Positions 20,909-25,800 of a stretch of 64,000 bases of DNA are shown in pieces; within the stretch, counting starts at the first letter, position 1; every line of letters starts with the position of its first letter. The notes under the pieces are model-generated. The model saw only the letters and a list, made by a program, of their open reading frames with translations. It was not told the origin of the DNA and did not search any database. This DNA comes from Saccostrea echinata. Lineage: Eukaryota. The translations under genes and the position numbers were made by a program. The stretch lies in NCBI RefSeq assembly GCF_033153115.1, contig NW_026889757.1:5084001-5148000 (forward strand). The letters are read 5' to 3'.

Positions 20909-22302
20909 AGTATTTCTCCCTGGCTACTATTAATACTTTTTACATTTCACTTTATTTCTCATAGATTTATTGAATGAATATTTGTAAGATCATGTATTTT
21001 TGTGGTATGTATTGTTGGTATGTTTATTTGAATGAAATTTTTTAATCATATAATTTCCTAACAAATTTAGCTTTTTATGATTATGTATCTTCCAGATAAA
21101 TTTAATGAATGTAACACCCCCTTTTTCATTAATCCCACAATATCGTGTATTTTTGCATTCATAATAAAATAAAATGAAATCAACAATGCTTTAATATTTG
21201 TAACATACATCACAACTTAAAGGTGCTTATTTTATGGCGTAAATATGTAGTATCGGTACTCCTTTTAATATACTATATATGGAAATTTAAAAGTTGATAC
21301 ATTTGCAAATAGTTTGCTTAAATGAACTTATTGAAGAGAAAAATAATATATTTAATTCTGTATGAACTTATTAGGGGGTCCAAGGTCATAGCATACCAAA
21401 GCACACGGCGAGATGATATTCTGTCGGTGAAACTGGTTTCGGAACTTCTAACTTGACAGCGATGACGAAGGTAAAATAATTGCAGCCCGGAGGACCGGGC
21501 TGCTCTATACATATAAGTTTAAGTGTTGGTATATGGGGATTGAGGTGGGAGAAGTTATTCAGAATTAATGGTTTTCTAAACATTAAAAAGATTGTTAATC
21601 AGAATGTTCTTTCCCTTTATAAATTACGAGATACACAATATATTTACTTCCATAAAGTGAATCTGTAAAAATATATATGTTTTTCATATTTAATATATAA
21701 AGTTGCTTATCATTTACTATCGAAAAAACGACAGGTCCCTTTTTTTAGAACATCGAATTTTACTTATCGCATAAAAACGTAAAAAGTACTTTACACAGTT
21801 CGTGTTTTATATTCTTTAAGTGAAAGACATTTTTGAAAATAGGTGATGCATGTGTCTGGTTTCAAATTATATTTTATGCAGCCACCATTTACTTGAGGAA
21901 TTGATAAAGTTTAAAAAGGGTATCGTTTTTGTTCGATTTTCATCCGACTATAAGTTTTCAAAATATTCTCGACTATCGTCTCCATCATTTAGACGCATGC
22001 CTTTTTCACACATATCGAAGCGGTTTGATGATCAAGACTCATTTCCATTGTTTACTTTATTTATTTCCCGGGCGACAATTGATGGTTACATCAATGTTTT
22101 CTTGTTGAAAAATGTGGTTATTTTTTTTTTCAATCAACAGATGTCCGTTAGATCTTCCTTCGTGTGATGAAAGGGTTTGAATAATAAACTAGAACTGTCC
22201 AAAAGGGACAAATACCCCCCGCTGGGTTTTTCAGAGAAGGTACCAAATCACTAATGTTTTCTAGATGTGAGAGGTGTTCACAATTTGCTTAAACATTTAG
22301 AG

Positions 22303-22637
22303 CACAGGAGTTCGCATACCTGTCAATTTTACCGAAATTTTTTGCAAATAAAAAAAATACGTAATACCTATAATAATAACACAAGGAGTGCAACGCATTT
22401 CAGGTCACCGGGGAACCCCTCTCTTAGTATCGAGGCTGCCGCGCAATCAATTTTCAATCGAAAATAATAAAACACTAACCAATCTTTTCGGAAGGAACCA
22501 TTCTTTATGTCTGTTAATGCATGTGACTTCAAACGCCTGATTAACAGCAGCAGCAGTGACGTTTCTCCACGACTTCGCTCAAACATTCGTTGTCCGCGAC
22601 GCCATTACGTGACGTATGACTATCACAGGTTCGTAGT
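22303..22637 (+). repeat. Left terminal inverted repeat (335 bp)
   Basis: Reverse complement of 32368-32702; same length and an identical 72-aa translation in both copies. Confidence 0.96.
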
Positions 22638-22852
22638 AAATGGATGTACTTGTCAAAGATAATAAAATATTTCTATTTAGAACAAGTTTTGTTTATTTGG
22701 TTACTATATTAAATTACAAATATATATATATAGGGTTTATTGTTAAGAAATATTTTTATGTTGAGGAAACTTTAAAACCCAGGGGAAACAACTCTACCCA
22801 AAATGTCAACAGTTGAATTTGGCTCGAAATTCAAATCTTATTAAAGATAAAT

Positions 22853-25800
22853 ATGTCAACTCATTTAGACATTCTTGCTTGGTAAGTTGGGCTTTTAGAA
22901 CTAACATTTATAGCATAGAAGTTGCAATTAGATTAGTCCTAAAAATAATTTACATATTATCTTATGTACTGATACCATGTGCATTGAATATATTTTAAAA
23001 TAAAAGATTAAAACACAAGTCAATGAAAAAAATTGAAAATTACAAAATCAAAAATATTTTACTATATAAAAATATTTATGTTTACCTTTTCAAACATATC
23101 TGAATATAAGATGATGTGCAGAAGAAGTGCAGGTCCCCCCCCCCCTTTTTATTTGAAAATTATGTTAAAATAATGATGAGTAATTCTAACTGTTGAAAGT
23201 ACTGGTATCAATAAATAAAAATCACATGCTAGCATACTTTGAATTGAAAGAGAATAATGATGAAAATCAATACTAAGTAAAACTTCCTGAGGCAGGACTT
23301 CATGAATTTATCTCTACTCACTCTGGACCATAAGATTAGCCCACATATCATACATATTTAACATCCACTGAGCCTGCCTCATGCAAAGCAAATGTTCATA
23401 TGTGAAATTTAATATAATTGCAGTCTTGTAAATGAAAATATAGAGCATCAAAAGTCTGTGTTTTAAATAAAGCCCACTCTTGCTATTTATTTCACATAGA
23501 ATCTCTCACATATTCACAAAAACATGAGAACCGAATAAAAGACACCAAAATTTAGGTTAATTTTGTTTATTTCAATGATATAATGCAGCAAACATTACAT
23601 GTCAGCAGAACCTCAGAGAGTTAATGACAAGTTCCCAAAAGTGGTATGCAAGAAGGTTAAAGCAGAACCTGGGCCAAATTCTAAAAGCACAAGGAATTTC
23701 AATAACTAGTTCCATGATGAGAAGGATTAAGTATGAATACATTATAAAAACCATGCTTAGAAATTTGAATGTTATTTGCATTAGGGAATGAGAGTTAAAT
23801 TTTGCATTACAATATTTCTTTGATAAATGTGTGTGATGCACTGGTTTGTTTGATATTTCTAGTATGATTGTAAATGATGTACATTATAATCCTGTTACAT
23901 TTGCTAATCATAATCCATTTACACTGATATATATTTGTCATTGTGATTCCTTACAATATATAACTAATTTGGCCCAGGTTCTGCTTCAACCCTCTTGCGT
24001 TTCTTCGTAATCTGTCCAGATTTTCTCTCCGATAGAGCAGTTACTTTGGATCTGAGAGCCATTTTCTTTTTTCTGGGAACTTGTCGTTTGAACTCTTTAA
24101 GAGAGTCAACAAGACTTAATTTTATGAAATGTTCACTTATGTCTTGGAAGAGCTCTATGATGAGTTGTAAAACTATTTCATCCTCTATATCACTATCTGT
24201 GGGTATCTTACAAATACTTATCCACTCCTGTATCAATGAATAATTTTCATCAATCTTATTTCTCAGAAACTGATGAATGTTTTCTGTGTGAAAATTAATG
24301 TGTTCAATAGTTAGAGATGACTGTATTGCTCTATGAAGACTGATAAAAAATTTAAAGACTGGTTCACTAACTATAGTAAGCCCTCTACTTTCACCTTGTT
24401 TGGCTTTAATTTCCAACACAGTTTGGTCATTAGTATTAACATCCTCTTCCTTGATCCTCAGTTTCTGAAGAATTGCCTGTTTCTTGTAATCCAGGTTACA
24501 AAGCGCTTTCATCTTTCGACTTGTGCTTCCCAGTCTATGTAGTACGGAGTCTTGAAGCCGTCTTCTGATTTTATAAACACATCTTCCAGCAAGATACCTC
24601 ACCTTGTTCTTTGCTGCACAACTTATATCACCTTGTGTCTGTTCACCTTGTACATGTTGTAGGTTCAAAGAATCTTCTTGCTCTTCTAAAATGGCACTTG
24701 CTTTAGAAGCAAGGATTTGATCTATTATCCACAAAGTTAACTTTGAACTGAACTTGTTTTGTTCTTTTGTTACCTGTTGAACATTGAAAGTTAGTTTAGC
24801 ATAATTGATATGTTCATCACTTAACAGGAAACTGTTTATACTGTGATAAAATGCTGTAAATTCTGGGGGATTTCTCAGTCTAGATGACATATAATTTTCC
24901 ACCTTGTGCTGCAAGAAACAGGCATGTTTTCTAATAGTTTGGGAACAAAGGAATTCCAACGAAAATGATTTCAGAAATTGAGCTGATTTATTTTCATCTA
25001 AGAAGTCATTTATGTTGTATTTAAAGTCATCAGGAATGTGCTGAAATTCTTGACTATTTTCTTCCTCCTGATGAAAGTCCTCTTTGTACAATTTCTGTTC
25101 CTCGGTTTGTTGTGCAGTTTCTGATGGTATTTCGCAAAGTGCACTTGACGAACTATTACAGCACTCCAGATCATCCTCAGGAACAAGAAATGTCTCATTA
25201 TAAAAGTCAAACACTTTCTGAGGATGTTTCAGAAAAGCAGCATCCTGATTGAAATTCCTAATCCTCAGTCCGTCAATAGTTGTTGCCCTTCCAAGGGCAA
25301 CCCCTAGCTGCCCAGCACAGAAAAAAGAGTAACAATCTACTTCCACAAATTCCAGGGTTTGTCCCTGGGCCCTATGTACAGTCAGAGCAAATGCAAGACT
25401 AAGTGGATATTGTTTTCTACAAGCTAGAGTGACATTTCTATCAGGGTCAAAAATATCAAAGTTAGCTTGTTTCATAGTCACCAATTTTCCTGAAAAGTTT
25501 ACTACAGGAGGTTTGTCCTTTTCCAAGGAGTGGATAGTCCCTCTCATACCATTGTAAAGGCCAGAAGCAAGGTTTTTTAAAAGAATTACAGGTGCATCCT
25601 TCTTCAGTAACAGGTGCTTCTGCACTGGACTTTTCCTCAAGAGCTGAATATTTCCTACGATGATATACATTTATAAATATAAAGTCATAACAGATTTAAA
25701 TACTTTCAAAATTTGCCTAAGTCACAATCTCCTGCTACCTGCTAAGAAGGACTTGAATCTCACCTGCCCCTAAGATTTACATTAGGTAAAATATTTGTAT

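What the first reader, a model, noticed from the sequence alone, without database searches (positions are those of the whole stretch)
24030..24620. Split transposase: the missing P C-terminal domain appears fused to the helicase
Seen: the transposase stops about 75 aa after its last catalytic motif (DLIENFF..QR..NPT). The helicase tail reads VRYLAGRCVYKI...SRGLTIVSEPVFKFF...ELFQDISEHFIKL..KEFKRQ..KKKMALRSKV. Known: P/THAP9 transposases typically continue after the catalytic Glu with a domain of pattern LxYIAGY..K...GGL..PS...F...R. Inference: that domain has moved to the helicase, which would tether the helicase to the transpososome and make the two genes mutually dependent rather than passenger and carrier.
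Basis: partly seen in the sequence, partly recalled or inferred. Interest (0 to 1): 0.88.

Follow-up and report, generated by a model that had tools for sequence, protein, structure and literature searches.

The report
P-transposase tail domain on transposon helicase
In an oyster jumping gene of the P-element type, the transposase lacks its usual C-terminal DNA-gripping domain, and a domain predicted to have that same fold sits on the tail of a helicase encoded by the same element, which suggests a two-protein division of labour not described for this transposon class.

Summary
The window (Saccostrea echinata) holds a 10.4-kb P-superfamily transposon at 22303-32702, with 339-nt inverted ends and an 8-bp target duplication. 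It encodes a P-like transposase and a Pif1 helicase.

- **Transposase end.** The transposase ends about 75 aa after its catalytic Glu motif. Four divergent paralogues with single uninterrupted ORFs end at the same place, so no exon is missing.
- **Helicase tail.** The tail (last-exon ORF aa 344-546) belongs to a conserved family of 1105 clusters. Its top members are almost all Pif1 + tail + PHD finger.
- **Sequence tests.** Pfam Tnp_P_element_C and PDB profile searches find no similarity.
- **Structure tests.** AlphaFold models of the window tail and of a 19%-identical paralogue both rank the Drosophila P transposase C-terminal domain (6p5a_B, residues 617-734) first of 48,161 PDB chains. Z is 11.3 and 9.8, and all 118 residues align.
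- **Linkage.** At least 12 tail loci in this genome lie within 10 kb of a P-like transposase.

Physical tethering, mutual dependence and the direction of the domain's move are unproven. The complex prediction gave no verdict. Another P-like clade in this genome lacks this domain and showed no tail-bearing gene in the DNA sampled. The scan's first readers also noted a P-type element with a PIF1 helicase elsewhere in this genome (s1-814987).

The parts
22295..22302 (.). Left copy of the 8-bp target-site duplication ATTTAGAG
   Evidence: Read directly. The same 8 bases follow the right end.
22303..22641 (+). Left terminal inverted repeat, starting CACAGGAG
   Evidence: arms 22298-22641 and 32364-32707, 344 nt, 99% complementary. 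Ends refined; at least 275 candidate copies of this terminus in the genome, 40 scored at 91-100% identity, many as inverted pairs about 2 kb apart.
23967..25655 (-). Last exon of the Pif1-like helicase: 2B/2A helicase motifs followed by the roughly 400-aa helical extension (approximate 5' boundary)
   Evidence: ORF 25670-23964. Pfam PF21530 and PF13538. tblastn with paralogous helicases. Database protein P0001, LOC133181165 of Saccostrea echinata.
24645..25034 (-). First helical sub-domain of the extension (ORF aa 213-342), no known fold match
   Evidence: AF2 model m301c3e9ae40a residues 13-142, pLDDT above 90. Best PDB Z is only 6.8.
24033..24641 (-).
   Evidence: Alignments A1/A2. Profile search finds 1105 clusters. 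Top members are Pif1 + tail + PHD.
24069..24632 (-). Part of the tail that superposes on the Drosophila P transposase C-terminal domain (ORF aa 347-534)
   Evidence: 6p5a_B residues 617-734, Z 11.3, rmsd 2.7 A, 118 of 118 aligned, rank 1 of 48,161. Replicated with a paralogue (Z 9.8).
23967..24110 (-). Basic C-terminal stretch of the helicase (16 K/R in 48 aa). No PHD finger follows in this copy.
25889..26119 (-). Helicase exon (approximate)
   Evidence: tblastn.
26294..26476 (-). Helicase exon (approximate), motif region GDFKQLSPV
   Evidence: tblastn. ORF listing.
26746..26936 (-). Helicase exon
   Evidence: tblastn. RNA-like contig joint 26936->27664 with minus-strand GT..AG ends.
27664..27788 (-). 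Helicase exon 2
   Evidence: Joints 26936->27664 and 27788->32204. tblastn.
32204..32300 (-). Helicase exon 1 with start codon and Walker A (GQCGTGKT), just inside the right inverted repeat (5' limit approximate)
   Evidence: tblastn. Translation. Joint 27788->32204 skipping 4415 nt (one contig, 30 letters on the short side).
28456..29625 (+). Transposase exon 1 (approximate 3' limit): N-terminal region and start of RNase H
   Evidence: ORF. tblastn with paralogous transposases.
29865..30041 (+). Transposase exon 2 (approximate)
   Evidence: tblastn.
30223..31302 (+). Transposase last exon (approximate 5' limit): insertion domain, RNase H C-terminal motif DLIENFFCQQR, short basic end, stop codon
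   Evidence: Family profile hits 6p5a_A at E 6.1e-10.
32364..32702 (-). Right terminal inverted repeat
32703..32710 (.). Right copy of the target-site duplication ATTTAGAG

Best explanation
The element at 22303-32702 is a two-gene P-superfamily DNA transposon. Its transposase has the P-type RNase H core with an insertion domain but ends right after the core, with no folded C-terminal domain.

The co-encoded Pif1 helicase carries a roughly 200-residue all-helical domain after its motor. This domain has the fold of the P element transposase C-terminal domain (CTD). In the Drosophila strand-transfer complex the CTD sits between the RNase H domain of one subunit and the GTP-binding domain of the other, and it grips the looped-out single-stranded transposon end and the target DNA.

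**Shown:** the fold match, the conserved absence of the domain from the transposase, and the conserved linkage of the two genes.

**Inferred:** the helicase tail takes the CTD's place in the transpososome, or at least on the same transposon-end DNA. This would bring a 5'-3' helicase to the cleaved ends. There it could remodel the ends or drive repair synthesis across the donor gap. Most relatives also carry a C-terminal PHD finger that would add a chromatin contact; this copy has lost it.
For: 1. **Fold match.** The AF2 model of window:23967-25070:- has pLDDT 91.8 and pTM 0.81. An all-against-all structural search of 48,161 PDB representatives ranks 6p5a_B (P transposase residues 617-734) first. 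Z is 11.3, rmsd 2.7 A, 118 of 118 residues align, and the next rows score 8.6 and 8.1.
2. **Replication.** The model of a paralogue that is 19% identical (L013, pLDDT 91.5) again ranks 6p5a_B first. Z is 9.8, it is the only chain at Z>=8, and the next scores 7.0. 6P5A was released in 2019-10, after AlphaFold2's training cut-off (my knowledge), and no templates were used.
3. **What the CTD is.** It is all-helical, contacts transposon and target DNA, and ends in a basic helix (PMC7776569). The tail is all-helical and ends in a basic stretch.
4. **Transposase family.** The family profile hits 6p5a_A at E 6.1e-10, and the alignment ends at the RNase H C-terminal motif. Five transposases that are 35-39% identical all stop about 70 aa after D-x-I-E-N-x-F-C-Q-Q-R, four of them in single ORFs. 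None of the 120 best relatives carries PF12596.
5. **Linkage.** At least 12 tail loci in this genome lie within 10 kb of a TNP-like transposase. Divergence of the transposase and of the tail are correlated (rho 0.82 over 10 non-independent pairs).
6. **Activity of the family.** 8-bp TSD, 99% identical ends, and many roughly 2-kb derivatives with the same ends.
Against: - There is no sequence-level similarity to Pfam PF12596 or to the 6p5a_B sequence. Foldseek found nothing.
- The tool's own note says Z below about 13 can arise by chance for helical proteins.
- The two AF2 models share most of their alignment, so the replication is only partly independent.
- About 70-87 residues of the tail are insertions relative to the 118-residue CTD.
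- A second large clade of P-like transposases in this genome (L019 type; 349 relatives, 120 listed, some with THAP) also lacks the CTD. No tail-like domain was found in the 7 kb sampled around four copies. A P-like core may therefore work without any CTD.
- No protein-protein contact has been shown.
Confidence: 0.55

Rival explanations
1. The tail is a true relative of the P CTD, but it works only as a DNA-binding module. It brings the helicase to single-stranded or gapped DNA at transposon ends or at the donor break. It does not occupy the CTD site or bind the transposase, and the transposase is self-sufficient for cutting and joining.
For: The P CTD mainly contacts DNA (PMC7776569). CTD-less P-like transposases with no tail gene found in the 7 kb sampled exist in the same genome. 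Drosophila PIF1 is reported to promote DNA synthesis during double-strand gap repair (title and abstract of bioRxiv 10.1101/554550).
Against: The linkage is very stable, and tail and transposase co-diverge across deep lineages. This fits a closer partnership, though it does not prove one.
Confidence: 0.25
2. The likeness to the P CTD is a convergent helical arrangement. The tail is a helicase-specific accessory domain, for example a scaffold between the motor and the PHD finger, with no evolutionary or functional tie to P transposase.
For: No sequence or profile similarity. Foldseek was blank. Helical models often reach Z 10-14 by chance according to the tool's own note.
Against: It aligned over its full length and stood 2.7-2.8 Z units above the next rows. 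It belongs to the very transposase superfamily encoded next door, whose members here lack that domain.
Confidence: 0.13
3. The helicase is a captured host gene riding as a passenger and plays no part in transposition.
For: Some tail-bearing helicase loci showed no transposase in the flank that could be fetched (L027, L029). The L023 contig from another organism has a decayed helicase without a tail.
Against: The same gene pair recurs in at least 12 loci and at least five deeply diverged lineages, with intact ORFs. In the window, helicase exon 1 starts just inside the right inverted repeat and its first intron encloses the transposase gene.
Confidence: 0.05

Closest known systems
Drosophila P element transposase / vertebrate THAP9 (P superfamily)
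   Same: RNase H core with an insertion domain (profile hit to 6p5a_A at E 6.1e-10). 8-bp target-site duplication and inverted ends. A helical domain with the CTD fold is present in the system.
   Different: - The CTD-fold domain is on a separate Pif1 helicase, not on the transposase.
- No THAP domain; the N-terminus looks RFX-like (RFX5 E 0.036; PF02257 in some relatives).
- The inverted ends are 339 nt rather than 31 nt (the 31-nt figure is from my knowledge).
- There are two genes, and the transposase lies inside the helicase's first intron.
Helitron/Helentron Rep-Hel proteins
   Same: A Pif1-family helicase encoded by a eukaryotic DNA transposon.
   Different: There the helicase is fused to an HUH Rep nuclease and the element moves by rolling circle, without TIRs or TSD (my knowledge). 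Here the partner is a separate DDE-type P transposase, and the element has TIRs and an 8-bp TSD.
Two-protein cut-and-paste systems such as PIF/Harbinger (transposase + Myb-like protein) and RAG1/RAG2-like Transib relatives
   Same: A second element-encoded protein is conserved alongside the transposase. In Harbinger it supplies DNA binding or targeting in trans (my knowledge; the RAG1-RAG2 transposon origin appears in the abstract of PMC4411706, listed).
   Different: Here the partner is a motor helicase that carries a domain which is part of the transposase itself in related elements.

Membership tests
P superfamily DNA transposon (the element) | Transposase with a P-type (TNP-like) RNase H core split by an insertion (GTP-binding) domain | tested here: met
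   Family profile A6 hits 6p5a_A at E 6.1e-10 in three collinear stretches. PF21787 is found in paralogues at 1.8e-12 to 2.3e-11. PF21788 is found in some relatives. The window's own exons give only a weak PF21789 hit (E 0.024).
P superfamily DNA transposon (the element) | 8-bp target-site duplication and terminal inverted repeats | tested here: met
   ATTTAGAG on both sides. 339-nt ends, 99% complementary.
P superfamily DNA transposon (the element) | N-terminal THAP zinc-finger DNA-binding domain | tested here: not met
   No PF05485 in the window ORFs or in the 120 best relatives. There is a weak RFX-like signal instead.
P superfamily DNA transposon (the element) | C-terminal domain (Tnp_P_element_C) on the transposase | tested here: not met
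   The transposase ends about 75 aa after the catalytic Glu, and this is conserved in five lineages. No PF12596 in relatives.
Tnp_P_element_C (Pfam PF12596), for the helicase tail | Match to the family HMM above its cut-off | tested here: not met
   No hit at E<=10 for seven tails. None among 49 full-length family members at E<=0.01. None in the genome-wide scan, whose control was silent.
Tnp_P_element_C (Pfam PF12596), for the helicase tail | Fold of the P transposase CTD (6P5A residues 617-734) | tested here: met
   Rank 1 of 48,161 in two searches: Z 11.3 and 9.8, rmsd 2.7 and 2.6 A, 118 of 118 aligned. That PF12596 covers the same residues as 6p5a_B is my inference from its name and length.
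Tnp_P_element_C (Pfam PF12596), for the helicase tail | Profile-profile (HHpred-type) similarity to P/THAP9 C-termini | not testable with these tools
   No PF12596-bearing sequence could be obtained. All three protein searches returned only CTD-less relatives.
Pif1 family SF1B helicase (the helicase gene) | PIF1 motor domains, including Walker A and the 2B domain | tested here: met
   PF21530 at E 1.5e-5 in the last exon. PF05970 at up to 2.6e-36 in paralogues. Walker A GQCGTGKT in exon 1. The exons are collinear with paralogues.

The most novel reading that the evidence does not exclude
The split state is ancestral. In this reading, early P-superfamily elements were two-component machines in which a Pif1 helicase supplied the CTD in trans. 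The CTD of Drosophila P and vertebrate THAP9 would then be a remnant of that helicase partner, captured by gene fusion when the helicase was lost. That would make the helicase-bearing elements of bivalves and hemichordates living representatives of the original P transposition machinery, with an obligate helicase step.
Probability: 0.15. Interest if true: 0.85.

Novelty: new variant of a known kind. Interest (0 to 1): 0.7.

Why it matters
P elements and THAP9 are a textbook transposase family, and the role of their C-terminal domain became visible only in the 2019 cryo-EM structure. A natural lineage in which that domain sits on a separate motor protein would be a ready-made separation-of-function experiment. 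It would show whether the CTD can act in trans, and it would tie a Pif1 helicase directly to cut-and-paste transposition or to repair of the donor gap. It would also add a helicase-assisted type to the short list of multi-protein eukaryotic DNA transposons. The family looks recently active in oysters, with intact ORFs, a target duplication and many short derivatives, so it is experimentally approachable. I found no description of it in the searchable literature. Repbase reports could not be searched.

Tried and rejected
**Sequence routes to the P CTD, all blank**
- Pfam on the window ORFs, on seven tails at E<=10 and on 49 full-length relatives.
- phmmer and hmmsearch against PDB sequences. 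A wider profile (A5) was swamped by PHD-finger hits.
- A PF12596 scan of the whole genome found nothing, but its control was also silent, so it is uninformative.

**Structure and feature searches that gave nothing**
- Foldseek against PDB and against viral models found nothing significant.
- The ESM Atlas gave only weak hAT-dimerisation leads (0.76), which I disregarded.

**Attempts to obtain PF12596-bearing proteins for a profile-profile test**
- Both transposase searches returned only CTD-less relatives, so hhalign against PF12596 was not possible.

**Complex prediction**
- Complex prediction on the L013 transposase core plus the L013 helicase extension gave no verdict. The score was 0.00, ESMFold2 ran without my alignments, and the partner's own fold was uncertain. 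This is not evidence either way. Two earlier attempts found the machine busy.

**Genomic context outside this genome**
- The one outside contig (L023) has a transposase plus a decayed helicase without a detectable tail.
For seven tail loci, only the flank where a transposase was not expected could be examined.

**RNA evidence**
- Only three small runs of one sample were available, held as contigs and 90-99% alike.
- They do not cover 30.9-31.5 kb, so they say nothing about the transposase 3' end. The tail region was outside the 6-kb stretch I could lay reads on.

**Other**
- Spliced protein models were not joined.
- I rejected the idea that the short transposase is a truncated or mis-annotated copy, on the basis.
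Full report
**What is in the window**

The window comes from the oyster Saccostrea echinata (contig C8 of a 923-Mb assembly).

Between 22303 and 32702 lies a 10,400-bp element:
- It is bounded by 339-nt inverted repeats that are 99% complementary and begin CACAGGAG.
- It is flanked on both sides by ATTTAGAG, an 8-bp target-site duplication.
- The same terminus occurs in at least 275 candidate places in the genome. Forty were scored, at 91-100% identity. Many form inverted pairs about 2 kb apart, which is what short non-autonomous derivatives look like.

The element has two genes.

*Transposase (plus strand).* It lies in three pieces: 28456-~29625, ~29865-30041 and ~30223-31302.

*Helicase (minus strand).* It is a Pif1-like helicase with these exons:
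- Exon 1 at about 32300-32204 carries the start codon and Walker A, GQCGTGKT.
- Further exons lie at 27788-27664, 26936-26746, ~26476-26294 and ~26119-25889.
- The last exon is a 568-aa ORF (25670-23964).

RNA-like contigs from a public run show a joint 27788->32204 whose ends read GT..AG on the minus strand. The helicase's first intron therefore encloses the whole transposase gene (one contig, 30 letters on the short side). The database model of this gene (P0001, 806 aa, LOC133181165) lacks the Walker A exon.

**Checking the observation**

- The transposase's last ORF carries NSDLIENFFCQQRGIRNGLNSNPT. It stops 76 residues after the Glu, and its end is low-complexity and basic.
- The helicase ORF runs without a stop from the Pif1 2B domain (PF21530) into a roughly 400-residue extension.
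I set the conserved domain at aa 344-546 (24033-24641).

**Is the short transposase real?**

Yes. The genome holds several deeply diverged elements of the same kind (L013, L014, L016, L018; 35-39% identity to the window's transposase). In these the transposase is one uninterrupted ORF of 686-804 aa. All of them end 65-80 residues after the same D-x-I-E-N-x-F-C-Q-Q-R motif, with a similar short basic end.

A profile of 32 family members hits the Drosophila P transposase chain 6p5a_A at E 6.1e-10. The last aligned stretch ends at the RNase H C-terminal motif. None of the 120 best relatives carries Pfam PF12596 or a THAP domain, and a few carry an RFX domain. These relatives come from bivalves, a gastropod, the hemichordate Ptychodera and a priapulid.

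**What the tail is, by sequence**

A tail-only search of the genome found 30 places.
- The distant hits lie in ORFs of 465-1107 aa that are again Pif1 helicases, most ending in a PHD finger. Each lies beside a TNP-like transposase.
- Seven tails that are 20-44% identical share invariant K-x-R-Y-x-x-G, Q...L-T, F and K...R positions.
- Their profile finds 1105 clusters at E<=1e-3, 653 of them at E<=1e-10, among 1.84 billion representatives.
- Of 49 long top hits, 37 carry PHD, 32 carry the Pif1 2B domain and none carries a transposase domain.
- Named members come from Mytilus, Argopecten, Pecten and Ptychodera.

The tail is therefore a conserved module of a helicase family, not a piece of transposase stuck onto one copy. 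No sequence method links it to the P C-terminal domain.

**What the tail is, by structure**

AlphaFold2 with an 81-row alignment gives a confident all-helical model of the extension: 368 aa, pLDDT 91.8, pTM 0.81.
- Foldseek against the PDB found nothing.
- The search that aligns the model to each of 48,161 PDB representatives put 6p5a_B first.
- That chain is residues 617-734 of the Drosophila P element transposase in the strand-transfer complex. The C-terminal domain was deposited as its own chain.
- The match has Z 11.3, rmsd 2.7 A, all 118 residues aligned and 15% identity.
- It covers model residues 147-334, which are ORF aa 347-534. The next rows score Z 8.6 and 8.1.

I repeated this with the extension of the L013 helicase, which is 19% identical (pLDDT 91.5). 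6p5a_B is again first, with Z 9.8, rmsd 2.6 A and 118 of 118 aligned. It is the only chain at Z>=8, and the next scores 7.0.

Two caveats apply:
- The tool warns that helical models can reach such Z values by chance.
- The two models share most of their alignment.

Against that, one specific chain was predicted in advance, out of 48,161. It came first twice and aligned over its full length. It belongs to the transposase superfamily encoded next to the helicase. 6P5A was released after AlphaFold2's training cut-off (my knowledge), and no templates were used.

I take common ancestry of the tail and the P CTD as likely, at about 0.8.

**What the CTD does in P**

The review PMC7776569 describes the CTD as follows:
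- It is entirely alpha-helical and joined to the RNase H domain by a disordered linker.
- It makes many contacts with transposon and target DNA, and the single-stranded transposon end loops across it.
- It ends in a basic helix that points at the target DNA.

The helicase tail likewise ends in a basic stretch, with 16 K/R in its last 48 residues.

**Linkage**

At least 12 tail loci in this genome lie within 10 kb of a P-like transposase: the window, C81 (two copies), C9:41.25M, C54:18.80M, C33:15.12M, C20:5.03M, C29:20.96M, C25:19.97M, C43:1.88M, C1:14.66M and C1:0.517M.

Two loci showed no transposase in 8-9 kb upstream (L027, L029).

Across five elements, transposase and tail divergence are correlated (rho 0.82). 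The 10 pairs are not independent and the range is narrow.

**What limits the interpretation**

1. A more canonical P-like clade in this genome (L019 type) has strong PF21787, PF21788 and PF21789 hits. It has 349 relatives, of which the 120 listed include four with THAP. It also ends about 45 residues after the RNase H motif. It lacks PF12596, and no tail-like domain was found in the 7 kb sampled around four copies. A P-like core without a CTD is therefore common and may be self-sufficient.
2. The direction of the move is open. It could be transposase to helicase, helicase to transposase, or independent acquisition.
3. No contact between the two proteins has been shown. The complex prediction gave no verdict.

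**Most likely mechanism**

The tail probably places the Pif1 motor on the transpososome or on the single-stranded transposon ends, at or near the position the CTD holds in P. I put this at 0.55. Once there, two roles are plausible:
- It could remodel the cleaved ends.
- It could drive repair synthesis across the donor gap. This fits the reported role of Drosophila PIF1 in double-strand gap repair (bioRxiv 10.1101/554550, title and abstract).

These steps are inferred. Only the fold match, the conserved missing domain and the linkage are shown.

**Novelty**

I found no paper describing P-type elements with a Pif1 helicase or a trans-encoded CTD. Repbase reports could not be searched.

First readers of this scan noted the element itself (s1-814984), its interleaved genes (s1-814995), an RFX-like N-terminus (s1-815079) and a similar element elsewhere in the genome (s1-814987).

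I class this as a new variant of a known kind.

Noticed in passing
window 27789-32203: The helicase's first intron (4415 nt) contains the whole transposase gene on the opposite strand. Helicase exon 1, with Walker A, lies just inside the right inverted repeat. The database model LOC133181165 (P0001) misses this exon and starts with a doubtful exon at 28161-28105.
   Followed up: partly
window 29657-29868 and 30411-30544: RNA-like contigs show two further joints whose ends read GT..AG on the minus strand. These are spliced transcripts antisense to the transposase coding region, possibly alternative helicase-strand transcripts. No plus-strand (transposase) splice joint was seen in these small runs.
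   Followed up: no
own genome, e.g. G000:C12:15455910-15457996, C45:5182439-5184479, C44:3297755-3299827: Many inverted pairs of the element's roughly 314-nt terminus lie about 2 kb apart at 91-94% identity. They are likely non-autonomous derivatives mobilised by this family, with at least 275 candidate termini in the genome.
   Followed up: partly
window 28456-28720 and relatives (alignment A6 positions 5-68): The N-terminus of the transposase family shows a weak RFX winged-helix signal (RFX5 8zjr_M at E 0.036; PF02257 precomputed in a few relatives). No THAP domain was found.
   Followed up: partly
window 23648-23680 versus 23966-23998: The last 33 nt of the helicase ORF recur as an inverted copy 285 nt downstream (94%). 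This copy has no PHD finger, although the closest relatives (P0002, P0003) and 37 of 49 family members end in one. A rearrangement may have removed it.
   Followed up: partly
L023 (JBEVXV010000976.1, labelled MAG: Sedimenticola sp.): This 10-kb contig of a bacterial MAG encodes an intact P-like transposase of this family and a multi-exon Pif1 helicase remnant. It is almost certainly animal DNA binned by mistake.
   Followed up: partly
L019 (G000:C51:6928000-6935000) and relatives P0275-P0393: This is a second, larger clade of P-like transposases, often named THAP9 in mussel annotations. They are about 900 aa with strong TNP-like Pfam hits. They end about 45 aa after the RNase H motif with no C-terminal domain, and no helicase was found in the 7 kb sampled.
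   Followed up: partly
window 32016-32133: A near-perfect 57-nt palindrome (89%, 4-nt loop) lies between the transposase 3' end and helicase exon 1. Its function is unknown.
   Followed up: no
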